Virus record (IMG/VR): IMGVR_UViG_3300046170_000378
Span: 148,343-212,342 of that record
Length of the DNA stretch: 64,000 nucleotides
Reading direction: 5' to 3' (one strand)
Below are positions 9,050 through 44,937 of this stretch, one piece after another (position 1 is the first letter of the stretch; each line of letters opens with the position of its first letter). The position numbers and the translations under genes are program-made. The notes beneath the pieces are model-generated. The model did not search any database, had not been told where the DNA came from, and saw only the letters and a list, made by a program, of their open reading frames with translations.

Positions 9050-10987
9050 ATGGTAACTAATTTTACAGCAAATCAAATCGGTGACTTTATGTTCGCTAAA
9101 CTTGTAGATCCTTATGAGGATATTACTAAAGTTACGGGCTGGAATGTTACTACGGGTGTTTCTACACCAAATACTGTTGGACTTTTATCTATGTCTCTTG
9201 GCGGTTTCAATATCACAGGAATAGACACTAACTTAGATTTAGTTCCAGGTGAAAAAATATTGATTTCTAATTATACAGTTACTGTTGATGCTATAATTAG
9301 CCCTAACGAGTTTACTATTTTAGAAGGAGCTCCGATTTCAACTACAGGAATCAAATTCTATAAAAAACCAGATTCTAATAATCATTTTGAATATTCATAT
9401 AGATGGTCTCAAAATGGTCCTAGTACAGATGGTGGACAAATGTCTCCATCTAGGGTATTAAATATGGGTACTGGACCTAATGATTTATTAGGCCAAACAT
9501 TTGATCCTACAAAGCCGCTTTGGTTAGACGTTAAAGCAGAGGTTAATAGATTAAGTGACTACAACACAATAACATTATTAAGTGTTACATTTGAATTACT
9601 TTCTGAGAACGGTGTAATAGAAAGTTGTCCACAATTTTGTGGGGATTGTGATGACGCATGGTCAATGAGTGGATGTGCTAATATTGTTATAGACTGTGAT
9701 GCACCGTTATATGATCCATATAATTTACAGAGGCCAGTTGATACTTATAGAGATATAAGTGAATTATCTTCAGAAATGTGGGGTCACCCAGTAAAATACT
9801 TTAGAGTAGAACCTGACAAAAGGTCGAGTGATGTGGTGTTAATGGAATATTCGCTGTATAATGTAACAGAAAACGCGGAACTTAAAATAATGGTGCCAGA
9901 CAATGCAATGCCTACCCAAGAATTTCAATATGATATTTTTGGAATGGGGTTTGAAGACTTTGAGGTGCATATTACGCAAGGCCAATTTAAAGCGGCATTT
10001 GGTTTAGGACCAAGTCCTAGATCTAGAGATTACTTATATTTCCCACTAATGAATAGGATGTACGAAGTACGTACGGTTTCTTTCGCAGATGAATTCAATA
10101 TGGATATGACGTATTGGAGAGTAATGCTAACTAAATACGAAGAAAGAACAAGCTCTATACATACCGATACTGCAATTGAACAAGAGGTAGATGATTTAGT
10201 TACGGGAATAGAAGAGGTATTTGGTGAAGAGTTACAAGAAGAATATGCAAAGGTAACTAAACCAGAACAATATAAAACAGTTTTTAGTGAAGTTAATGAT
10301 GGCACTAGATATAAAATACATAATGATTTAACTATCAAAGATACTGAAATTAGAAATCAGTGGACAATCGTAGCCAAAAACTGTTATGATATGTCTAGTA
10401 TTAAAGATGTTGGCGTTGAAGCATTACAATATGTAAAAAAATCACAATTAGCAGTTGATAAAAATCTAGCAATGACACTTTGGTTTAGACCTGGTGATAA
10501 ATCATTTACTTCAATTAATCCAAATATAAACTTAGTAAAGGGTAGAACAGGATCTAAGGGATTAAGCTTAGAAACTTCTAAAGATTCAATTACAATAAAG
10601 TTAAACAACGATACACATACATTTAATTACAATTCTGAATTAGAACACAATGTATGGTATGGTGTTGTATTTAATTTAAGTAATACTTATTTCGGGCTAA
10701 GTGTTGATGTTTATAGATTAGATCCTATGAGCAATTGGCAAAACGGCCAATCAATACAGGATACATTGACTTCAGTATTATCAGAAAAACTAGATAGTAT
10801 TACCCCATATGGTTGGACAACGCCTGACAGATGGTCTCTGATGCCAGGTCCACATGAAATAACAAACATAAGGTTATTTAATAAAGTTATTGGAGATGAA
10901 CAACATATTAATCTTTTACAACAGTATGTCGTTAGAGATAATCAATATGCACATATTATCGACAATGCAATACCTTCTATCAACTAA
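9050..10987 (+). CDS. Neck/head-completion protein (T4 gp14-like core) with N-terminal extension and C-terminal LamG/ConA-like domain
   Basis: SEMWGHPVKYFR and PRSRDYLYFPLMNRMYEV..TKYEE resemble gp14; MTLWFRP..WYGVVF..ITNIRLFNK resembles LamG; late motif at 9011. Confidence 0.6.
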   Translation: MVTNFTANQIGDFMFAKLVDPYEDITKVTGWNVTTGVSTPNTVGLLSMSLGGFNITGIDTNLDLVPGEKILISNYTVTVDAIISPNEFTILEGAPISTTGIKFYKKPDSNNHFEYSYRWSQNGPSTDGGQMSPSRVLNMGTGPNDLLGQTFDPTKPLWLDVKAEVNRLSDYNTITLLSVTFELLSENGVIESCPQFCGDCDDAWSMSGCANIVIDCDAPLYDPYNLQRPVDTYRDISELSSEMWGHPVKYFRVEPDKRSSDVVLMEYSLYNVTENAELKIMVPDNAMPTQEFQYDIFGMGFEDFEVHITQGQFKAAFGLGPSPRSRDYLYFPLMNRMYEVRTVSFADEFNMDMTYWRVMLTKYEERTSSIHTDTAIEQEVDDLVTGIEEVFGEELQEEYAKVTKPEQYKTVFSEVNDGTRYKIHNDLTIKDTEIRNQWTIVAKNCYDMSSIKDVGVEALQYVKKSQLAVDKNLAMTLWFRPGDKSFTSINPNINLVKGRTGSKGLSLETSKDSITIKLNNDTHTFNYNSELEHNVWYGVVFNLSNTYFGLSVDVYRLDPMSNWQNGQSIQDTLTSVLSEKLDSITPYGWTTPDRWSLMPGPHEITNIRLFNKVIGDEQHINLLQQYVVRDNQYAHIIDNAIPSIN

Positions 10988-37096: not shown

Positions 37097-38236
37097 ATGC
37101 AAAAATTTAGTAACTTTATGCTTCTTAGAGAAGCTGAAACCAAACTTAAAGTTAATGTACCTTCGGATATATTAGACTTATACAATCTTTTCAAAAAGAA
37201 TGGTAAAGAATTGTATGTGGTTGGTGGTGCAGTACGAGATGCATTATTAGGTAAAAAACCAAAAGACTTTGATTTGGCTACTGACGCATTTCCTGCAGAA
37301 GTTATTGATATTGTTACTAAAGGAGGTTATTCAACAACAGGTGAAGTTGGACACCAATTTGGTGTAGTTATTGTAAACGTACCTTCTGATCCAGCGGGTG
37401 TTGAGATTGCTACTTTTAGAGAAGACATTGGAAAGGGTAGAAGACCAGATGCAGTTGAGTATTCTACTATTGATAAAGATGTACTAAGACGAGATTTAAC
37501 AATCAATGCACTGTTCTATGATATGGGCAGACAAGAGGTTGTTGATTTAGTTGGTGGTTTGGATGATATAAAAAATTCAAAGATTAGAACTGTAGGTGTT
37601 GCAGCTGATAGATTCGCTGAAGATCCTTTAAGAAAACTAAGAGCTTTAAGATTTGCTGGTAGAACTGGATCAAACTTAGAAGAAGAAACTGCTAATGCCA
37701 TTTTAACAGATAATAGTTTAGAAGGTATTAGTGCAGAGAGAATTAGAGATGAGTTTAAAAAATCTATAGTTTCTGCTAAGTCCGCTAAGAAGTACTTAGA
37801 GATGGTCTCTGAATTCAACCTGTGGTCTGTTATGTTTCCTACATTAGAGATCAATAAAAAATTCATAGACACCAATACTTGGCTTGTTCAATTGGGTACA
37901 CTGTTTATTGCCAATGAACATAAAAAAGAAATGAACAAACTTACATTTACCAATGATGAGATTGATGCATGTATTTTCTTAAAGAGAATCATGGCGTTCG
38001 ATGTAAATGACGTGTTTGATTTACATAAGCAATTTAAAAACACCAACATGGACAAGAAAGAAGTTCTTGAATTTGCAAAAATACACAAATTAGATATTAA
38101 AACCTTGAAGGCGTTCTTTAAATATAAACCAACTACTAATGGTAAGGATGTAATGAAAGAGTTCGGCATCAAAGGACCAGAAGTTGCAATAAAGATAAAA
38201 CAAATAGAATCAGATAAATTTAAAAAGACTATTTAA
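37097..38236 (+). CDS. cca: CCA-adding enzyme / tRNA nucleotidyltransferase (class II)
   Basis: YVVGGAVRDALLGKKPKDFDLAT, EIATFR, RRDLTINAL, EDPLRKLRALRF; adjacent to tRNAs lacking CCA. Confidence 0.9.
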   Translation: MQKFSNFMLLREAETKLKVNVPSDILDLYNLFKKNGKELYVVGGAVRDALLGKKPKDFDLATDAFPAEVIDIVTKGGYSTTGEVGHQFGVVIVNVPSDPAGVEIATFREDIGKGRRPDAVEYSTIDKDVLRRDLTINALFYDMGRQEVVDLVGGLDDIKNSKIRTVGVAADRFAEDPLRKLRALRFAGRTGSNLEEETANAILTDNSLEGISAERIRDEFKKSIVSAKSAKKYLEMVSEFNLWSVMFPTLEINKKFIDTNTWLVQLGTLFIANEHKKEMNKLTFTNDEIDACIFLKRIMAFDVNDVFDLHKQFKNTNMDKKEVLEFAKIHKLDIKTLKAFFKYKPTTNGKDVMKEFGIKGPEVAIKIKQIESDKFKKTI

Positions 38237-38622
38237 TGGAATTAATTTCAACACACCCTGTTAAAAAATCAGATTTAGGTTTTCATGGTAATCTTTTCGG
38301 TGGTAAATTATTAGCATGGGTAGATGCAGCTGGCGCATCTTACGCATCTCAGGTATGTGATACGCCAAGAATGGTAACAGTACTTATTGACGAGTGTGTA
38401 TTTAAGAAACCTGCAAAAGAAGGACATTTACTTAAAATTTACGGAGAAGTAGAAACCATAGGTAGAACTTCAGTAATATTAAAGGTTGAGGCTAGATCAC
38501 ATAATGTGTATGATGGAAGGCAAGCTATTATTCTTGCTACAAATATTAAATTTGTTAGAATAGATGAACAAGGGGAAGCAATTCCTATTAGTCAAAGGGT
38601 AAAAGATAAATTTAAGAAATAA
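38236..38622 (+). CDS. Acyl-CoA thioesterase (HotDog, YciA-like)
   Basis: HGNLFGGKLLAWVDAAG, IGRTS..LKVE, FVRID..G..IP. Confidence 0.85.
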   Translation: MELISTHPVKKSDLGFHGNLFGGKLLAWVDAAGASYASQVCDTPRMVTVLIDECVFKKPAKEGHLLKIYGEVETIGRTSVILKVEARSHNVYDGRQAIILATNIKFVRIDEQGEAIPISQRVKDKFKK

Positions 38623-38836
38623 GAGTAATATATACTAGCCATAGTTATTTTAGCCATGGAAAGTAAGAAACAATAATAGCAATGAATAACGAGCAACAAA
38701 ACGGTAACACTCAGTTAAATCAAGACAGAAACGCTTTCAATCAGAAAGTAAGTAAACTATCTATGTTAGGCAGAACTAAGAAAGTTCAATGGTCTAATAG
38801 ACGTAGATGGAGAAACGTGTAAACACATAAAATCTT

Positions 38837-39430
38837 ATGGAATTTTTATTAAACGTCTTAACGGTGTTTTTAACACTGTTCGCTGTCATAGATATGCCAG
38901 GAAACGTACCTTTGATTATTAAGCTACGTAAAGAAAATGGTGAAATAGAATCTCTAAAATCTACAATAATAGCCACGGTTATTATGGTCTCAATTCTATT
39001 TGTAGGGCAAACTTTATTTAGACTTTTGGGAATTGAAACATTTCACTTTGCATTGGCAGGCGCGATGCTTCTCCTATATTTCGGTGTTAAGATGGTACTA
39101 GGGATAGAATCAGAATCTAATTCAGAACCAATGCCAGCAACTATATTTCCAATAGCATTTCCAATTATAGCAGGACCAGGAACCTTATCAACTATCATGT
39201 CACTGACTCAAGATTTAAGTAATATTGAAATTATTTTGGGTATTATATTGAATGCTATAATGATTTACATATTCTTAAAGACAGCACCTTGGATTCAAAA
39301 CAAATTAGGCGTTGTTGGAATTACTATTATGGAGAGAGTCTTTGGAATCTTACTAGTTGCCATTGGAATGAAAATACTAATCAATTCTTTGGTACTAAGT
39401 GTTGTTGCAGCTCAATCAGCGATAGGCTAA
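38837..39430 (+). CDS. marC: MarC family integral membrane protein
   Basis: LFAVIDMPGNVP, GIETFHFALAG, FPIAFPIIAGPG, ERVFGILL. Confidence 0.88.
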   Translation: MEFLLNVLTVFLTLFAVIDMPGNVPLIIKLRKENGEIESLKSTIIATVIMVSILFVGQTLFRLLGIETFHFALAGAMLLLYFGVKMVLGIESESNSEPMPATIFPIAFPIIAGPGTLSTIMSLTQDLSNIEIILGIILNAIMIYIFLKTAPWIQNKLGVVGITIMERVFGILLVAIGMKILINSLVLSVVAAQSAIG

Positions 39431-39577: not shown

Positions 39578-39946
39578 TTAGTACAGTATTTGTTTAGGAT
39601 ATTTTTCAAATAAGATATATCCGGATCTAATTCTAGCATCTACGTGAGGAGTAGCGTAGTCAACTATTTCTACTATTTTAGATAATTCCACATTGTCTTC
39701 ACCTTCTAATTTAGGATTATCAAAATAAGCATATCTGTTTTTATCAAAAACCTTTTGCATAATAATCCACTTGGAGATAAAGTAATCCATCTCATCTTTA
39801 AGCCTTTCTAAATGTAAAAGATGTGGAGAAACTTTCTTGCTAAGGTAAGATTTATCAACCGATTCCAAATAAGCATATAAAACATATTGCTTATGTTCAA
39901 AATCAACTGGAGCTTGAGAATACCAATCTAAATCTAATAGCTTCAT
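39578..39946 (-). CDS. Late hypothetical protein
   Basis: ORF track; minus-strand GATATATA at 39951-39958. Confidence 0.65.
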   Translation of the reverse strand: MKLLDLDWYSQAPVDFEHKQYVLYAYLESVDKSYLSKKVSPHLLHLERLKDEMDYFISKWIIMQKVFDKNRYAYFDNPKLEGEDNVELSKIVEIVDYATPHVDARIRSGYILFEKYPKQILY

Positions 39947-39958
39947 AATTTATATATC

Positions 39959-39985
39959 AAAAAAAAGAGGGCCGAAGCCCTCTTT
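39959..39985 (-). terminator. Terminator for the minus-strand operon
   Basis: AAAGAGGGC-CGAA-GCCCTCTTT hairpin; the A-run reads as a U-tract on the minus strand. Confidence 0.8.
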
Positions 39986-39986
39986 C

Positions 39987-40259
39987 TTATTGTCCATGTA
40001 CTTCACTTTTTACAATGAAGATATATTCACCAGGTCGTTCGGGATCTGGTTTGAAATCAATATCAATTATTTCATAATTAAATACTAATCTCATTGTCTC
40101 TCCTGGTTTTGCTCTCATAGTCCATGTTGTACCATAAGGATTTGCAAAATAATCTAGAATATCCACATCAGTATTAAAGTAGCGTGGAGATTTGATCTCT
40201 GAATAGTTAGCGCAACCAAATAGAGTTGCGAAGCATAAAAAAGTAAATAGTTTTTTCAT
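39987..40259 (-). CDS. Putative lipoprotein
   Basis: MKKLF...LFGC lipobox-like N-terminus. Confidence 0.6.
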   Translation of the reverse strand: MKKLFTFLCFATLFGCANYSEIKSPRYFNTDVDILDYFANPYGTTWTMRAKPGETMRLVFNYEIIDIDFKPDPERPGEYIFIVKSEVHGQ

Positions 40260-40273
40260 AATTAATTTTGTTT

Positions 40274-42073
40274 TTATCTAAATATGGTTATATGTCCGGA
40301 TCTTTGGTAAACTTCTGGAGAATTCCATTTACGTGCATAGAATGTATATGTGTAAACACCGTCTGAAACATAGCTCGGTCCATTATTAACACTTCCATTC
40401 CAATATGGATATGAATCAAAATCATCACCATATCCATGATAAATCTCACTACCCCATCTGTTAAAGACCCTAAACTCAACATCGACCCAGCAATTTAGAT
40501 CATAGATCATTTTCCATACATCGTTGATGCCATCGTTGTTAGGTGTAAATGTATTAGGTATAAAAACGGTCCATGGCCAGCATTCTTGCATACCGGGATC
40601 ATCAACACATGGCATACCGGTTTCGCAATCTACAGGAATGAACTCAGTTATAGTGTCTGTTAAATACACATACTCTACGACATCAATAAATGTGGTGTCA
40701 TATTGAGTTACATATAATGTATCAGTTATGAACACAGGAACCTCTACCTCAACAGTGTCTATCACATCAATATAAATAGTATCAGTTATGAACACAGGAA
40801 CCTCTACCTCAACGGTGTCTATTATGTTTACATAAACAGTATCGGTTATTGTTATCGTTTCATATTCACATGAACCATCGTCTTCTTCTGCATTTGGGTC
40901 AAAGTTAATTGCACATATATCTGTGCATCCTACTTCTGGCTCACACAGTGGAACAGGCGGTAAGTTCACAACAGTAGTGTTATTACCAGTAACTATTTCG
41001 TCATTAACAGTATTAACTTCTATTACAAATAATCCACCTTCAGACCAACCTTCTGGAAATACAAACTGTCCAGTATTAAATGTTTGACCTTCACCTGGCG
41101 GTATTTGTAAAATCATACTATCTCCACTATCATAACAAAACGTCGCGTCGGGATGCCAAAGTTCTACACAATATGTGTTCATATCAATGTCACCAGAATT
41201 AGTTATAGTAAATTGAACTTGATAATATGGATTTCCAGAGGCATCACAGCCGGTTATGAATTCAACATTTCCGGCTACTTGTGCATCTGTTGAGCCTTCA
41301 GGTGGATAGACACAGCTACCATCATCTTCAGTTGCATTTGGTTCATAATTTAATGCATCGGGATCGGTACAACCTGGAATAACAACAGTTTCGCAAATGA
41401 AATCTTCACCCTGGATCATTGCAGGTCCAGGATTGTCTTCTCTACAAACTGACCATGAATTATCACAATCCATATCTGGATATATTTGCACATTTGAAAG
41501 TGGCTGTTGTCCATCGTCATTAGCACCTAATTCAGCCCAACCTCCACCTGGGGCGTTAGGGCCATCATTTTGATACCATGAGTTTGAATAGTTTATTTGC
41601 CAAATAACAAACTCTACACATTCTCCTTGATCTAGCCAATAATCAATTACTGGAGCAGCACAGCAGCCTATTGCTGGAGAACCATCACAATTACCATTAC
41701 TTGGATTATCTAGCTCTACAACAAAGGTATCTCCAGTGTACAGTGGAAATTCTGAACTAGCATAATTTGATGGAAAATCAGAAGCTGATGGACCATACCA
41801 CCAACCAGGATGATTAGAAGTTGGTGCCATAAAACATGGACCATCGTCGTCTACATCGACAGCTTCATTTTGACCAGGAATATGAAAGCCAATCATTACC
41901 ATATTGACATGATCATTACTTCCATTATATCCAGTAGCTCCGCAGCCCTCGCCGTTAATGACTTCAACTGTAACTTCATAAGTATTTAAATTTACATCTG
42001 TAATTGCCAAATCACATTGACCTGAAATCACAAATACATGAAAAAACGTAAGTAAAAATAATAATCTTTTCAT
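40274..42073 (-). CDS. Secreted protein with T9SS type-B (gliding-motility-associated CHU_C) C-terminal domain
   Basis: Signal peptide; GCTDPDALNY..ATEDDGSC repeats; ITDT.Y repeats with a 60-bp duplication; IPNTFTPNNDGINDVW..VFNRWG..WNG..DGVYTY. Confidence 0.85.
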   Translation of the reverse strand: MKRLLFLLTFFHVFVISGQCDLAITDVNLNTYEVTVEVINGEGCGATGYNGSNDHVNMVMIGFHIPGQNEAVDVDDDGPCFMAPTSNHPGWWYGPSASDFPSNYASSEFPLYTGDTFVVELDNPSNGNCDGSPAIGCCAAPVIDYWLDQGECVEFVIWQINYSNSWYQNDGPNAPGGGWAELGANDDGQQPLSNVQIYPDMDCDNSWSVCREDNPGPAMIQGEDFICETVVIPGCTDPDALNYEPNATEDDGSCVYPPEGSTDAQVAGNVEFITGCDASGNPYYQVQFTITNSGDIDMNTYCVELWHPDATFCYDSGDSMILQIPPGEGQTFNTGQFVFPEGWSEGGLFVIEVNTVNDEIVTGNNTTVVNLPPVPLCEPEVGCTDICAINFDPNAEEDDGSCEYETITITDTVYVNIIDTVEVEVPVFITDTIYIDVIDTVEVEVPVFITDTLYVTQYDTTFIDVVEYVYLTDTITEFIPVDCETGMPCVDDPGMQECWPWTVFIPNTFTPNNDGINDVWKMIYDLNCWVDVEFRVFNRWGSEIYHGYGDDFDSYPYWNGSVNNGPSYVSDGVYTYTFYARKWNSPEVYQRSGHITIFR

Positions 42074-43345
42074 TATCTAATAAATATTTTTCTAGTAATA
42101 ACAATACCACCGATGTATTCTTCTACCTGAATATAAAATCCTGGAGTTAGATCACCATACTCAGAGTATGTTCTACCTAATATGTCCACCCATTTTACTT
42201 CAACTATGTCATCATCTAAGTTTCTCACTAAATTTTTAAGATTACCTGATTCAATCATACCCGCATCTCCAGTATCACATTCAGTACCATAATTGACTAA
42301 AAATAAAGTAAGATCATTAACATCTACGACTCCGTCATAGTTAAAATCTGCAGGCAAACATGCTCCGGTTTGGGTGTGCCACGTCAAATAATCTAAAAAG
42401 TCATTGATATTAATATATCCGTTTCCGTCTAAATCCCATGGACAATTACCTAAATCACATCCACTACATTCATTATTAATAGCTGCAGTTCTACCCAATT
42501 CTAATTGAGCGTGCATTCTATTAATTTGACCAGGAGTAAATAAATCTTGACAATTATCAGGCGCATATGACATATAAGATTCGTCGACCTCATCTATATC
42601 TGGACAAGCATCTTGACACGACCAATCAATTGCAGTTGGGGGCGTATCACAAACCCTATCACCTTCAAGTTCACAATCAACTTCGTTAAGAGCAGTAGGT
42701 ACAAGAATAGTTGTTACCGAATAAGTCTCTAGAAAAAGTGTGAGATAATCCACACCAGTGTCCAGCCTCATGTGTAAATGTTTTAGAATCAGAATCTACT
42801 ACTTCTGTAGCTCTAACCCAAACACCAACATTAGCAGGTGGAAGAGCAGTAAATCCTAAAATTCCACCACTCCATTCACCAATGTAGACTTCCATAATGT
42901 CACCGGTGTTTTCACCTATTTCATTTTGAACTTGATTATAACAATATATTGGGTTACTACACCACGAAGATAATTCCGATTCTTCATAAAACCTAACATC
43001 CTCCAAACAAAAAGAAATATCAGTGTTATTGATTTCAAATTGTTCATTTAGATAATCAAATTCATTTTGAATGTCTAATTCAGTAAAATCATACGTGCTT
43101 TGAATAACGTGTATAATTGTAGGAATTGTTTTAAGTGTATTTTGTTGTCTCGCTAACTTTTTTTCTACAGCGTCCTGTAGAGCAAAGAAGGATCTAGCGA
43201 ACTTCTCATCTTTGAGCTCTTCGCTAGTAGTTATAGCTTGCCCACATTTCTCAACGTGATGTAAGCTCTTTTGTGCAATGGCAGTATTAATAGTCAATAG
43301 ACATACCACGGCACTCATAAAAACAGATAGTTTTTTGAGTTGCAT
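42073..43345 (-). CDS. M43 (pappalysin-like) zinc metalloprotease with dockerin/EF-hand repeats and T9SS type-A-like tail, +1 indel at ~42699
   Basis: THEAGHWCGLSHTF, GDRVCDTPP, YMSY...FTPGQ..RM, DLDGNGYININD, C-terminal VDILGR..GFYI..TRKI. Confidence 0.8.
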
Positions 43346-43587
43346 TTAATAACAGTTTATTTTGATTTCTAGCCCATAGAAGTTTAAATGTCGGCGTTCC
43401 GACAGGGCATACCATATATATCGAAAAAGAAGCTTATTTTTATATTTGTGTTGAGCGTTTTTTAAAAAATATTAAATATTTTTACACTAAACACTATACA
43501 TAATAGATGAATATTTAAATAAATCAGACCAACAACCGAGATATATAGATTAATTACACTCATGTAATAAAAAAATAATCAGATATT

Positions 43588-43830
43588 ATGGCATTTAAAG
43601 ACATATTTAAAGACAGTAATGACATTAATGAAAAAAATGTTGTAGGTTTTGCATCATTCGCAATCATGTCGCTGTTTGCACTGGCTGATTTGGTTACTGG
43701 TTTCTTTGGTGAAACATTAACTATTGACGATACTATTTTTAACTCATTTGTAATTGTTACTCTTGGTTCATTTGGTATCGATGGTGTTACTAAAATCTTC
43801 AAAAAATCTGAAGGTAATAAAGAAGGATAA
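43588..43830 (+). CDS. Small 2-TM membrane protein, possible holin
   Basis: Two hydrophobic helices, charged C-terminus, late motif at 43540, upstream of endolysin. Confidence 0.45.
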   Translation: MAFKDIFKDSNDINEKNVVGFASFAIMSLFALADLVTGFFGETLTIDDTIFNSFVIVTLGSFGIDGVTKIFKKSEGNKEG

Positions 43831-43847
43831 AAAATACAAACTTAATA

Positions 43848-44042
43848 ATGAGAAAGAAGATGATAGCATTGTCGTTAAGTTCAATATTATTATTCGGATG
43901 TGGCGCTAGTAAGCCTGCATCGGACGGATGTTGCAAACAAGAGGCACATTTAACAGAAAGAGCAGCTGATGAAGGAATATTAAATGGTTTATTGTTTACA
44001 TTAATAACTTACGCGATACTTAGTACTTTAAAAATAAACTAA
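43848..44042 (+). CDS. Small lipoprotein-like protein
   Basis: LLFGC lipobox-like. Confidence 0.5.
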   Translation: MRKKMIALSLSSILLFGCGASKPASDGCCKQEAHLTERAADEGILNGLLFTLITYAILSTLKIN

Positions 44043-44055
44043 GAATAAAGAGAAC

Positions 44056-44937
44056 ATGATTTTAAAGAAAGGAACAAGAGGTAAAGAAGTTAAACAACTC
44101 CAAGAGTATTTAGAAATAGGTGCAGATGGTGTATTCGGGCCTGGAACTGAAGCTGCAGTAAAAAAGTGGCAAAAAGAAAATAGCTTAGTAGTAGATGGCA
44201 TCGTTGGTCCTAAAACATGGGAAGCCATGGGATTAGCAACTACGGACGAAAGCGAGCAAGTTTATACAACTGATAATGGTTTAATTGTTAATAGACATTT
44301 CTTACCAAAGGGTGAATACTTAAATGGTCCATCTAAAAAAGAATATTGTTTCTTACACCACACAGCTGGTTGGAATAATCCATATAAAACTGTTAGAAAT
44401 TGGGGTAATGACACTAGAGGCCGCATTGCTACAGAGTTTGTGTTAGGTGGGCAAAAACTCACTAATGGTAACAATGACTACGATGGTGTAATGGTACAGT
44501 GTATGCCAGAAGGAGCATATGGATGGCATTTAGGCAAGAACGGATCACAGTATATGCACAAACATTCAGTAGGTATTGAAGTTAATAACTTTGGTTACTT
44601 AAAGAACGGTAAAGCATATCAAGGTAGTACTGCTCACGAATCTCAAATAGTAGAGTTAGCAGAATCATTTAGAGGCTACAAACAATGGCATAGATATTCA
44701 GATGCACAAATAGAAGCATTAGATAAATGGATTCGTTGGATTGGCGAAAGAGATGGTATTGATATTAGAGCTGGATTGCCAGCATTGGTTAAAGAAAAAG
44801 GTGCAGCGGCATTTGAGTGGAACGCAGACGCTTATTATGGTAAAGTCAAAGGTCTATGGACTCACACTAATACTAGAAAAGATAAGACTGATATGTTTCC
44901 ACAGCAGGAGCTTTTAGATTTATTAACTTCGTTATAA
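44056..44937 (+). CDS. Endolysin: peptidoglycan-binding domain + amidase_2
   Basis: VKQLQ..DGVFGPGTEAAVK.WQ..DGIVGPKTW; LHHTAG, SVGIEV, WTHTN.RKDKTD. Confidence 0.88.
   Translation: MILKKGTRGKEVKQLQEYLEIGADGVFGPGTEAAVKKWQKENSLVVDGIVGPKTWEAMGLATTDESEQVYTTDNGLIVNRHFLPKGEYLNGPSKKEYCFLHHTAGWNNPYKTVRNWGNDTRGRIATEFVLGGQKLTNGNNDYDGVMVQCMPEGAYGWHLGKNGSQYMHKHSVGIEVNNFGYLKNGKAYQGSTAHESQIVELAESFRGYKQWHRYSDAQIEALDKWIRWIGERDGIDIRAGLPALVKEKGAAAFEWNADAYYGKVKGLWTHTNTRKDKTDMFPQQELLDLLTSL

What the first reader, a model, noticed from the sequence alone, without database searches (positions are those of the whole stretch)
40274..43422. Late operon of apparent host type IX secretion cargo: M43 protease and CHU_C adhesin-like protein
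Seen: a minus-strand operon behind GATATATA encoding a signal-peptide M43 protease with a DILGR-type tail, a 599-aa Cys/Asp-rich repeat protein with a CHU_C tail, and a lipoprotein. Known: these CTDs route proteins through the Bacteroidota T9SS to the cell surface. Inference: a lytic phage hijacks T9SS to remodel the infected-cell surface (superinfection exclusion, gliding or grazing interference, matrix digestion) or decorates virions. It also points to the host phylum.
Basis: partly seen in the sequence, partly recalled or inferred. Interest (0 to 1): 0.7.

Follow-up and report, generated by a model that had tools for sequence, protein, structure and literature searches.

The report
Phage-encoded type IX secretion cargo operon
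A large marine phage carries a late-expressed operon for a zinc protease and an adhesin-like protein that both bear the export tags of the Bacteroidota type IX secretion system, so the phage probably uses its host's own secretion machine to place a protease unit on the infected cell's surface; the idea has precedent, but this widespread gene pair has not been described.

Summary
The operon is real and belongs to the phage. It is not host contamination. The window is the last 64 kb of a 212-kb T4-like marine jumbo phage contig.

- **Layout.** A GATATATA promoter-like motif (43422-43415, minus strand) precedes an M43 protease, a 599-aa CHU_C protein and a 90-aa lipoprotein. A hairpin plus T-run ends the unit. 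The motif occurs 40 times in the genome, always on the coding strand, including upstream of the capsid and sheath genes.
- **CHU_C tail: confirmed.** PF13585 scores E = 2e-13. TIGR04131 scores 35 bits, exactly its cutoff.
- **M43 gene: broken in the window by one extra base.** It is intact in all four seawater runs laid on it and in two independent assemblies (423 and 414 aa), so the break is an assembly error or a rare variant.
- **M43 'DILGR' tail: partly supported.** The curated type A models miss it. A profile of its homologues matches genuine Flavobacteriales type A sorting domains (HHalign 96%, P = 5e-9), but the tail lacks their N-terminal third. A true dockerin precedes it.
- **Distribution.** The CHU_C protein belongs to a family of 788 detected homologues, seen in phage-like contexts only. 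The protease sits next to it in six of eleven contexts and is fused to it in a seventh.

Secretion and biological role remain untested. Phage-borne T9SS cargo has been proposed before (Bellas 2020).

The parts
43415..43422 (-). GATATATA promoter-like motif, 69 nt upstream of the M43 start codon
   Evidence: There are 40 copies in the genome, all on the coding strand. The same motif precedes the major head protein (1284), the sheath (13590) and other genes.
42686..43345 (-). M43 protease, 5' part as read in the window. Signal peptide is residues 1-24 (43345-43274), with cleavage AIA|Q. A conserved pro-segment Cys follows (VEKCGQ). The zinc motif HEAGHWCGLSH lies at 42772-42740.
   Evidence: conserved xCG motif in homologues. 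One search gives hits to ulilysin (E = 2.6e-9) and mirolysin (E = 6e-8).
42694..42699 (-). Frame break specific to this assembly. The window reads TGTACCTACTGC where the population reads TGTA-CTACCGC.
   Evidence: one base left out at 42698 and A>G at 42694, in 4 of 4 runs at full depth; alignment with L095.
42073..42771 (-). M43 protease, 3' part. Real coding starts at about residue 26 of this ORF. It holds the Met-turn region, then a Cys-stabilised dockerin at 42444-42277.
   Evidence: NF041540, 29 bits. P0121 aligns from residue 26; 2y3n_B dockerin, E = 1.6e-8. Z = 8.5.
42076..42210 (-). C-terminal tail of M43 (IVEVKWVDILGRTY...GFYIQV...TRKIFIR). It is a type A-like T9SS sorting domain that lacks the N-terminal 'PNP' third.
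   Evidence: HHalign 96%, P = 4.7e-9 against 27 genuine CTDs, with all controls <= 2.6%; the best structural matches of the tail are the T9SS CTDs HBP35, RemZ, RemA and NucA (Z = 4.4-5.0); curated HMMs do not hit.
40274..42073 (-). 599-aa adhesin-like protein. Its start overlaps the M43 stop (TAATG). Parts: signal peptide 42073-42020 (ISG|Q); phage-specific N-domain 42019-41378; two CTDxxAxNYxPxAxxDDGSC motifs; CARDB-like Ig domain about 41302-40949; DTxY beta-repeats 40861-40634.
   Evidence: 788 homologues; alignment; AF2 model, domain pLDDT 70-90; 60-nt tandem repeat.
40277..40564 (-). CHU_C / type B T9SS sorting domain (residues 504-599), with the PNTFTPNNDGIND motif and a C-terminal R
   Evidence: PF13585, E = 2e-13. 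TIGR04131, 35 bits.; 97% conserved between strains whose passenger domains differ by 17-33%.
39987..40259 (-). 90-aa lipoprotein, third gene of the operon (MKKLFTFLCFATLFG|C). There is no acidic surface-export signal after the Cys.
   Evidence: Present in close relatives L095 and L096 (93-97% identity). A small ORF occupies the same position in L013 (85 aa) and L097 (94 aa). No family hits.
39959..39985 (-). Terminator-like hairpin AAAGAGGGC-TTCG-GCCCTCTTT followed by a T-run, closing the operon
39578..39958 (-). Neighbouring unit with its own promoter: a second GATATATA (39958-39951) and a 122-aa ORF of unknown function. It is conserved next to the module in relatives.
   Evidence: (69% identity in L013).
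43540..44937 (+). Divergent GATATATA (43540-43547) driving a putative lysis cassette: an 80-aa protein with two hydrophobic segments (holin-like), a 64-aa lipoprotein with a C-terminal membrane segment (u-spanin-like), and an amidase endolysin with a PG-binding domain
   Evidence: PF01510 and PF01471.. The holin and spanin assignments are inferred from sequence features only.

Best explanation
This is a late-transcribed, three-gene operon of a marine T4-like jumbo phage whose host is a T9SS-bearing member of the Bacteroidota, most likely Flavobacteriales.

**The two large products.** Both are built like host T9SS cargo.
- The first is a pappalysin-family (M43B) zinc protease. It has a Sec signal peptide, a cysteine-switch-type pro-segment, a disulfide-stabilised dockerin and a shortened type A-like sorting domain.
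- The second is an adhesin-like protein. It has a Sec signal peptide, a phage-specific N-domain, a CARDB-like Ig domain, a DTxY beta-repeat stalk and a type B (CHU_C) sorting domain.

**Proposed mechanism.**
1. Late in infection both proteins are exported by Sec and cut before Gln.
2. The host T9SS translocon passes them across the outer membrane.
3. The type B protein is held on the surface by a host PorP/SprF-type protein.
4. The protease is released or tethered beside it.

In some relatives the two are one polypeptide, so the working unit is a surface-tethered protease.

**Proposed role.** The unit cuts proteins on or around the infected cell at about the time of lysis. This could destroy or mask receptors, or loosen a protein matrix, so that progeny are not lost on debris.

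**Status of each step.**
- Shown: the domains, signals, operon structure, conservation and phage context.
- Inferred: secretion, anchoring, timing and purpose.
For: - **Sorting domains.** CHU_C is firm. The M43 tail is homologous to type A CTDs by profile-profile comparison, with clean controls, and its best structural matches are T9SS CTDs.
- **Signal peptides.** They obey the Q-rule in this phage and in the homologues L002 and L003.
- **Protease looks functional.** The zinc motif, Met-turn region and conserved pro-segment Cys are present (cysteine-switch latency of pappalysins: PMC6949598).
- **Operon structure.** The promoter motif is shared with the head and sheath genes. Stop and start overlap (TAATG), and a terminator follows the third gene.
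- **Linkage of the two genes.** M43 is adjacent to the CHU_C gene in the window, L095, L096, L097, L014 (36% identity) and L099. It is fused to it in a 969-aa ORF in L013.
- **Constraint on the signal.** Between two strains whose flanking genes are 98-100% identical, the passenger domains are 67-83% identical but the CHU_C domain is 97% identical.
- **Not chimeric.** An independent 14-kb assembly has the same synteny from the CCA enzyme to beyond the endolysin. More than 15 seawater runs hold the stretch.
- **Plausible host clade is rich in T9SS cargo.** Two marine Flavobacteriales MAGs each have at least 150 type A CTD matches.
- **Precedent.** Phage-borne T9SS cargo was proposed in PMC7468147 and PMC6949934.
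Against: - There is no experimental evidence of secretion, and the host is unknown.
- The window's own M43 tail fails TIGR04183 and PF18962, and alone gives only P = 0.04 in HHalign.
- The tail covers only the C-terminal two thirds of a type A CTD, which may be too short to work as a signal.
- From my own knowledge of the family, type B cargo usually has a cognate PorP/SprF gene nearby. None is in the 212 kb held (the genome is about 76% complete) or in the nine fetched contexts of relatives whose precomputed Pfam hits I could read (L011, L012, L013, L014 and L095-L099).
- Late expression is inferred only from a shared motif. The RNA-library fragments cannot be told from DNA carry-over.
- The dockerin has no identified cohesin partner in this genome.
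- The proposed purpose has no direct support.
Confidence: 0.6

Rival explanations
1. Nutrient-scavenging module (auxiliary metabolism). The secretion route is the same, but the purpose differs. A surface protease and a binding protein would work with a TonB-dependent transporter, like a peptide-directed polysaccharide-utilisation locus, to feed the infected cell amino acids for phage production.
For: - In two relatives a phage-encoded SusC-like TonB-dependent receptor lies next to the pair: directly upstream in L099 and 1.3 kb downstream in L014.
- Marine megaphages are reported to carry SusC-like receptors and peptidases as presumed metabolic genes (PMC9723777).
Against: - This phage has no Plug/TonB-receptor gene in the 212 kb held.
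- The operon shares its promoter motif with structural and lysis genes and sits back to back with the lysis cassette. That fits poorly with a role that needs time before lysis.
- The passenger domains are strain-hypervariable. This is more typical of conflict or recognition proteins than of metabolism.
Confidence: 0.2
2. The proteins are not T9SS substrates. They reach the periplasm and are freed only by lysis, or they are attached to virions. They then act as soluble or virion-borne enzyme and adhesin on neighbouring cells or particles. In this reading the C-terminal beta-sandwich domains serve as binding modules.
For: - Ig-like and sorting-type beta-sandwich domains are common decorations of phage particles (my own knowledge).
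- In L003 the homologue lies just upstream of the large terminase.
- The M43 tail is truncated relative to working type A CTDs.
- The operon is next to the lysis genes.
Against: - Cleavable Sec signal peptides are conserved across the family, and these are unusual for virion proteins.
- The CHU_C domain is at the extreme C-terminus in all aligned members and is far more conserved than the rest.
- There are no PHROG structural hits.
- No homologue occurs in 50,697 GenBank phage records apart from CHU_C-only hits in two uncultured megaphages.
Confidence: 0.12
3. The region is an assembly chimera with host DNA, or a decaying pseudogene cluster (the M43 frame is broken).
For: - The M43 reading frame is interrupted in the window.
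- It is the only minus-strand cluster in the window, and GC skew reverses there.
Against: - The population sequence is intact in 4 of 4 runs and in two independent assemblies.
- Both flanks are phage genes with identical synteny elsewhere.
- The phage promoter motif heads the operon.
- The passenger domains matched no cellular genome of GTDB.
Confidence: 0.03

Closest known systems
'Cryophage' T9SS cargo genes (Bellas et al. 2020, PMC7468147) and T9SS-sorting-domain ORFs of crAss-like phages (de Jonge et al. 2019, PMC6949934)
   Same: These are phage-encoded proteins carrying Bacteroidota T9SS sorting domains and are inferred to hijack the host system. In Cryophage the cargo genes are hypervariable between phage variants, as here.
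   Different: - Those cases are type A domains on glycoside hydrolases, PA14 or BACON proteins.
- Here the firm signal is type B (CHU_C), on a passenger found only in phage-like contexts, and it is paired with (or fused to) an M43 protease.
- The pair is conserved across distantly related marine phages and sits next to the lysis cassette.
- None of these cases has been tested experimentally.
Mirolysin and the other KLIKK peptidases of Tannerella forsythia, with their potempin lipoprotein inhibitors (PMC9890683, PMC6949598)
   Same: - Both involve an M43B pappalysin-family protease with a cysteine-switch pro-segment and a type A CTD.
- Both are co-transcribed with a small (about 100 aa) lipoprotein.
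- Mirolysin is among the PDB sequence hits.
   Different: - Potempin genes lie upstream of the peptidase. Here the lipoprotein is the third gene of the operon.
- The 90-aa lipoprotein gave no potempin among its matches in a sequence search of PDB chains at E <= 10.
- The phage protease has a dockerin and a truncated CTD.
- An inhibitor role for the lipoprotein is only a conjecture.
SprB-type type B CTD surface proteins of Flavobacterium johnsoniae and their PorP/SprF partners (PMC9143113, PMC12618676)
   Same: Both have a C-terminal CHU_C/TIGR04131 domain with the PNxFTPNxDGxND motif, an N-terminal signal peptide, and a repetitive adhesin-like passenger.
   Different: - The phage protein is far smaller (599 aa).
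- No cognate PorP/SprF gene is in the phage.
- The passenger is unrelated to SprB.
Cohesin-dockerin assemblies (for example 2y3n, the type II dockerin of Bacteroides cellulosolvens)
   Same: The M43 protein carries a genuine two-loop calcium-type dockerin. A relative (L013) encodes a cohesin protein with a weak type A CTD hit.
   Different: - No cohesin is found in this phage.
- The dockerin is Cys-stabilised (NF041540 'GC-type').
- The binding partner is unknown.
Lipoprotein zinc metallopeptidase of Maribacter phage Molly (PMC8776804)
   Same: It is a flavobacterial phage carrying an exported zinc protease, which its authors suggested digests extracellular matrix to aid entry or release.
   Different: It is a 199-aa lipoprotein-peptidase with no reported T9SS signal. 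I did not test sequence relatedness to the M43 gene directly, but the phage-collection search found no isolate-phage homologue.

Membership tests
T9SS type B cargo (CHU_C / TIGR04131) | C-terminal CHU_C domain scoring above the curated cutoffs | tested here: met
   PF13585 scores 50.7 bits against a cutoff of 27, and 53.8 bits in the six-frame search. TIGR04131 scores 35.0 bits, equal to its cutoff of 35.
T9SS type B cargo (CHU_C / TIGR04131) | Domain at the extreme C-terminus, combined with an N-terminal Sec signal peptide | tested here: met
   The domain spans residues 504-599 of 599. The N-terminus reads MKRLLFLLTFFHVFVISG|Q. The signal peptide was judged by eye, with no predictor available. 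It is conserved in 35 aligned homologues.
T9SS type B cargo (CHU_C / TIGR04131) | Cognate PorP/SprF-like outer-membrane partner encoded nearby | tested here: not met
   PF11751 is absent from the 212 kb held and from the precomputed Pfam hits listed for the neighbouring genes in nine fetched contexts of relatives. A host-encoded partner would be needed.
T9SS type B cargo (CHU_C / TIGR04131) | T9SS-dependent secretion | not testable with these tools
   This needs expression in a T9SS-proficient strain and in a T9SS-deficient strain.
T9SS type A cargo (TIGR04183 / PF18962) | Hit to the curated type A sorting-domain models | tested here: not met
   The window's tail gives no hit at E <= 10 or in the six-frame search. 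Among 18 homologues, 6 give weak TIGR04183 hits (best E = 4.3e-4), 6 give weak type C hits, and 1 gives a PF18962 hit at E = 0.014.
T9SS type A cargo (TIGR04183 / PF18962) | Homology to genuine type A CTDs, with the conserved D..G(R/K), GxY and terminal K motifs | tested here: met
   HHalign of the tail family against 27 CTDs from marine Flavobacteriales gives Prob 96% and P = 4.7e-9 over 43 columns. The controls were a reversed alignment, 30 column shuffles, CHU_C and the dockerin, and all scored <= 2.6%. G, Y, G and K are invariant in the alignment.
T9SS type A cargo (TIGR04183 / PF18962) | Complete beta-sandwich CTD of about 70-90 aa, including the N-terminal 'PNP' strand | tested here: not met
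   The match covers template columns 32-86 of 88 only. The AF2 model shows three strands after the dockerin. Structural Z-scores to solved CTDs are 4.4-5.0, which is suggestive only.
Peptidase M43B (pappalysin / cytophagalysin family) | PF05572 above cutoff, HExxHxxGxxH zinc motif and Met-turn | tested here: met
   The intact gene (L095, 100% identical over both window halves) scores 42.4 bits against a cutoff of 23. HEAGHWCGLSH and ESYMSY are present. Ulilysin, mirolysin and pappalysin hits give E = 3e-9 to 3e-6. In the window itself each half is below cutoff because of the frame break.
Dockerin | Duplicated calcium-binding loop-helix segment | tested here: met
   NF041540 scores 29-30 bits against a cutoff of 29. 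The profile hit to 2y3n_B gives E = 1.6e-8. The structural match has Z = 8.5 and rmsd 1.8 A over 58 residues. Cohesin binding was not tested.
Bacterial lipoprotein | Signal peptide ending in a lipobox with an invariant Cys | tested here: met
   The sequence MKKLFTFLCFATLFG|C can be read directly. No lipoprotein predictor was available.

The most novel reading that the evidence does not exclude
Marine jumbo phages of Flavobacteriia assemble their own modular, cellulosome-like proteolytic organelle on the dying host's surface. It would be delivered through the host T9SS. A type B-anchored adhesin stalk would carry an M43 protease, either by fusion or through phage-borne dockerin/cohesin parts. 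It would work with the lysis cassette as a receptor-destroying or exit device that protects progeny from re-adsorption. Its recognition domains would diversify rapidly between strains.
Probability: 0.15. Interest if true: 0.75.

Novelty: new variant of a known kind. Interest (0 to 1): 0.5.

Why it matters
- **Mechanism.** T9SS is known as a Bacteroidota tool for gliding, feeding and virulence. If a widespread group of marine phages loads its own protease-adhesin unit onto that machine, phages can rewrite the surface of major ocean degraders of organic matter during infection.
- **Practical use.** The pair is a host-phylum marker for uncultured jumbo phages.
- **Testability.** It offers a compact, natural pair of sorting signals (a type B CTD and a minimal type A-like CTD) that can be tested in Flavobacterium johnsoniae.
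- **Leads from relatives.** The fused and split forms, and the linkage to phage TonB-dependent receptors and a cohesin protein in relatives, suggest a larger phage toolkit for the outer membrane.

Tried and rejected
- **PHROGs:** no hit for M43, the CHU_C protein, the lipoprotein or the 122-aa ORF.
- **GenBank phage collection:** no DNA match. By protein, only CHU_C-domain hits in two uncultured ~640-kb phages and one weak M43 hit.
- **Viral-contig scan with the M43 3' ORF:** nothing confirmed.
- **Curated type A models on the tail:** no hit.
- **Profile of dockerin plus tail against PDB sequences:** only the dockerin and EF-hand part matched.
- **Foldseek of the full 599-aa model (pLDDT 66):** only generic multi-Ig proteins. 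The N-domain fold is unassigned.
- **ESM Atlas look-alikes of the N-domain:** scores below 0.8, so uninformative.
- **Complex prediction, M43 dockerin-tail against residues 19-400 of the CHU_C protein:** no verdict. This is not evidence either way.
- **Contigs from RNA libraries:** they cover parts of the operon and the lysis cassette, but cannot be told from DNA carry-over.
- **Lipoprotein against PDB sequences:** only a weak hit to a collagen-adhesin B-repeat (E = 4e-4) and no potempin.
- **L015,** the best 'cellular' CHU_C match (59% identity): an ambiguous 7.9-kb MAG contig of mostly unknown genes, so it does not help name the host.
- **Genetic code:** no alternative code was used. The frame break was read by reference to natural intact copies only.
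Full report
**Setting.** The window is the last 64 kb of a 212,342-bp IMG/VR virus record that CheckV estimates to be 76% complete. It encodes a T4-type major head protein, a large terminase, a tail sheath and a DNA ligase. Almost all genes are on the + strand. The finding lies in the window's one minus-strand cluster, where GC skew reverses. More than 15 seawater metagenome runs hold 93-98% of the sampled words of the stretch, so this is an abundant marine phage.

**What is there.** Read on the minus strand, the order is as follows.
- GATATATA lies at 43422-43415.
- After a 69-nt leader comes an M43 protease gene (43345 to 42073).
- A 599-aa gene follows, and its ATG overlaps the M43 stop (TAATG; 42073 to 40274).
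- After a 14-nt gap comes a 90-aa lipoprotein gene (40259 to 39987).
- The hairpin AAAGAGGGC-TTCG-GCCCTCTTT and a T-run follow (39985-39959).
- A second GATATATA (39958-39951) then heads a separate 122-aa gene.

**The promoter-like motif.** GATATATA is not a chance word.
- The window has 13 copies against 5.3 expected, and none of 100 shuffles reached 13.
- The genome has 40 copies, 38 on + and 2 on -. The two minus copies lie in this minus-strand cluster.
- Nearly all copies lie 4-130 nt upstream of an ORF start.
- The motif precedes the major head, sheath and other structural genes, so calling it a late promoter is reasonable but inferred.
- A third copy (43540-43547, + strand) points the other way. 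It heads an 80-aa membrane protein, a 64-aa lipoprotein with a C-terminal membrane segment, and an amidase endolysin.

The operon therefore sits back to back with what looks like the lysis cassette.

**The frame break.** In the window the M43 gene is two overlapping ORFs whose frames differ by +1. Pfam places the junction at profile position 87-89. Contigs from four seawater runs, one of which may be the source sample, all lack one base at 42698 and read G for A at 42694, at full depth. A JGI contig (L095) carries an intact 423-aa gene that is 100% identical to both window halves. An ENA contig of an 80%-identity strain (L096) carries a 414-aa gene. The break therefore belongs to this assembly or to a rare variant, and the gene is functional in the population. 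I used the natural intact copy by reference and named no other genetic code.

**The protease.**
- The intact protein scores 42.4 bits on PF05572 against a cutoff of 23.
- It matches ulilysin, mirolysin and pappalysins in the PDB.
- It has the HEAGHWCGLSH motif and the Met-turn region.
- It has a signal peptide that ends AIA|Q.
- It has a conserved Cys in the short pro-segment, as in the cysteine-switch zymogens of this family (PMC6949598).
- Downstream lies a genuine dockerin: NF041540 at cutoff, E = 1.6e-8 against a solved dockerin, and structural Z = 8.5.

**The M43 tail.** The curated type A models miss it. Six of 18 homologues give weak TIGR04183 hits. I then took 27 genuine type A CTDs from two marine Flavobacteriales genomes and compared profiles.
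- The tail family matches them with 96% probability and P = 4.7e-9 over 43 columns.
- The reversed alignment, 30 column shuffles, the CHU_C profile and the dockerin profile all score at most 2.6%.
- The window's tail on its own is not significant (P = 0.04).
- The match covers only the C-terminal two thirds of the CTD, and the 'PNP' strand is missing.
- In the AF2 model (pLDDT 82) the best structural matches of the tail are T9SS CTDs (HBP35, RemZ, RemA, NucA), but at Z = 4.4-5.0, which is only suggestive.

The tail is thus homologous to type A sorting domains. Whether so short a version works as a signal is open.

**The 599-aa protein.**
- PF13585 (CHU_C) matches residues 504-595 with E = 2e-13, and TIGR04131 scores exactly at its cutoff.
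- The rest is a signal peptide (ISG|Q), an N-domain without known relatives, two copies of a CTDxxAxNYxPxAxxDDGSC motif, a CARDB-like Ig domain, and DTxY repeats encoded by a 60-nt tandem repeat.
- The protein search detected 788 homologues. More than 100 are full-length at 35-80% identity, and nearly all come from metagenomes.
- Every context I fetched looks like phage:
  - a 292-kb contig (L011);
  - a 195-kb contig (L097);
  - a 113-kb contig (L099);
  - a small phage in which the gene lies just upstream of the terminase (L003);
  - a 73-kb contig filed under an 'Akkermansiaceae' MAG that carries ribonucleotide reductase, a holin, queuosine-pathway genes, Thy1 and a B-family polymerase (L014).
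- In one genome per GTDB species, only the CHU_C domain finds relatives, at 30-59% identity. Almost all are Bacteroidota, with Flavobacteriales on top. That scan was seeded on CHU_C motifs, so the search was not blind to the rest of the protein.
- No isolate phage in GenBank has a homologue.

**Linkage of the two genes.**
- M43 is immediately upstream in the window, L095, L096, L097 and L014. In L014 it has the same dockerin-tail cassette (36% identity).
- M43 is immediately downstream in L099.
- In L013 the protease domain is fused directly to the N-domain of the CHU_C protein in one 969-aa ORF. That ORF lacks the dockerin, the tail and the second signal peptide.
- Five other contexts show no M43 neighbour: L002, L003, L011, L012 (which repeats the L011 gene order) and L098. 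In L098 the gene sits at the contig end, so that context is uninformative.

The fusion shows that the two act together at one place. A direct test of dockerin binding to the CHU_C protein gave no verdict.

**Variation between strains.** Between the window and L096 the flanking genes are 98-100% identical in protein. The identities inside the operon are:

| Part | Identity |
|---|---|
| CHU_C protein, whole | 81% |
| CARDB-like domain | 67% |
| N-domain | 83% |
| M43 C-terminal half | 72% |
| CHU_C sorting domain | 97% |

A conserved sorting domain on a fast-changing passenger is what one expects if the tail must fit conserved host machinery while the exposed part is under diversifying pressure. 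The same was noted for the Cryophage cargo genes (PMC7468147).

**Interpretation.** The simplest reading is that both proteins are Sec-exported and passed through the host T9SS late in infection, forming a surface-bound protease unit. I put this at 0.6. I favour a role around lysis, such as receptor destruction or matrix loosening, because of the shared promoter motif and the adjacent lysis cassette. That role has no direct support.
- A feeding role is suggested by phage TonB-dependent receptors next to the pair in L014 and L099. This phage has no such receptor in the 212 kb held.
- Release only at lysis, or virion attachment, is less likely given the conserved signal peptides.
- Chimerism and gene decay are excluded as far as contig data allow.

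**Comparison with what is known.** Phage-borne T9SS cargo has been proposed from sequence for Cryophage (type A domains on glycoside hydrolases and a PA14 protein) and for crAss-like phages (PMC7468147, PMC6949934). The new elements here are:
- a type B cargo family seen only in phage-like contexts;
- its recurrent pairing or fusion with an M43 protease that carries a dockerin and a minimal type A-like tail;
- the position beside the lysis genes.

The nearest cellular analogue is the mirolysin/potempin arrangement of Tannerella forsythia (PMC9890683). The 90-aa lipoprotein gave no potempin among its PDB sequence matches.

I rate this a new variant of a known kind, of moderate interest.

Noticed in passing
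window 42694-42699: The IMG/VR contig has one extra base and an adjacent substitution that break the M43 frame. Four public runs and two other assemblies have the intact sequence. The contig consensus may contain further such errors.
   Followed up: yes
whole genome (G000); window copies at 1284, 2928, 9011, 11047, 13590, 16515, 18654, 35662, 37067, 39951(-), 43415(-), 43540, 55449: GATATATA(A/T) is a strongly strand-biased, intergenic promoter-like motif (40 copies, all on the coding strand). It is probably this phage group's late-promoter analogue of T4's TATAAATA.
   Followed up: partly
window 43588-44937 (+): Putative lysis cassette: an 80-aa protein with two hydrophobic segments (holin-like), a 64-aa protein with a lipobox (LFGC) and a C-terminal membrane segment (unimolecular-spanin-like), and an Amidase_2 endolysin with a PG_binding_1 domain.
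   Followed up: partly
L013:2135-2872 (-): A close relative encodes a 245-aa protein with a cohesin domain (35 bits) and a Por_Secre_tail match (23.5 bits, below cutoff). It lies divergent from the fused M43-CHU_C gene. This hints at phage-borne cohesin-dockerin assembly on the host surface.
   Followed up: partly
L014:11285-14065 and L099:3153-5861: Phage contigs carry full SusC-like TonB-dependent receptors (CarboxypepD_reg, Plug, beta-barrel) close to the M43/CHU_C pair.
   Followed up: no
L014 (GCA_028033555.1, JAOFDD010000001.1): A 73-kb contig binned as 'Akkermansiaceae bacterium' looks like a phage contig. It carries RNR, Phage_holin_10, QueC/PTPS/GTP cyclohydrolase I, Thy1 and a DNA polymerase B. 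It is probably mis-binned.
   Followed up: no
window 41312-41371 and 40868-40927 (residues 235-254 and 383-402 of the 599-aa protein): A short Cys-bounded motif, CTDxxAxN(Y/F)xPxAxxDDGSC, occurs twice here and in variable numbers in homologues. No Pfam or NCBIfam model hit the protein there.
   Followed up: no
window 40240-40273 and 40389-40420: Logan contigs of several runs branch here into diverged versions of the 3' end of the CHU_C gene, and assemblies break in the DTxY repeat (40540-40815). Several strain variants of this gene co-occur within single samples.
   Followed up: partly
window 37097-39430 (+): The phage carries a CCA-adding/poly(A) polymerase-family enzyme (the PolyA_pol family is annotated on its 98.7%-identical L096 copy), a 4HBT thioesterase (phrog_18230) and a MarC-family membrane protein just beside the operon. 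All are 98-100% conserved in the 80%-identity strain L096.
   Followed up: no
L002:8203-8751 and 10321-10890; L015:5849-6460: Relatives carry secreted CAP/SCP-like proteins with Q-rule signal peptides near the CHU_C gene. This is another class of exported phage protein. The CAP domain was confirmed only in L015; for L002 it was judged by eye.
   Followed up: no
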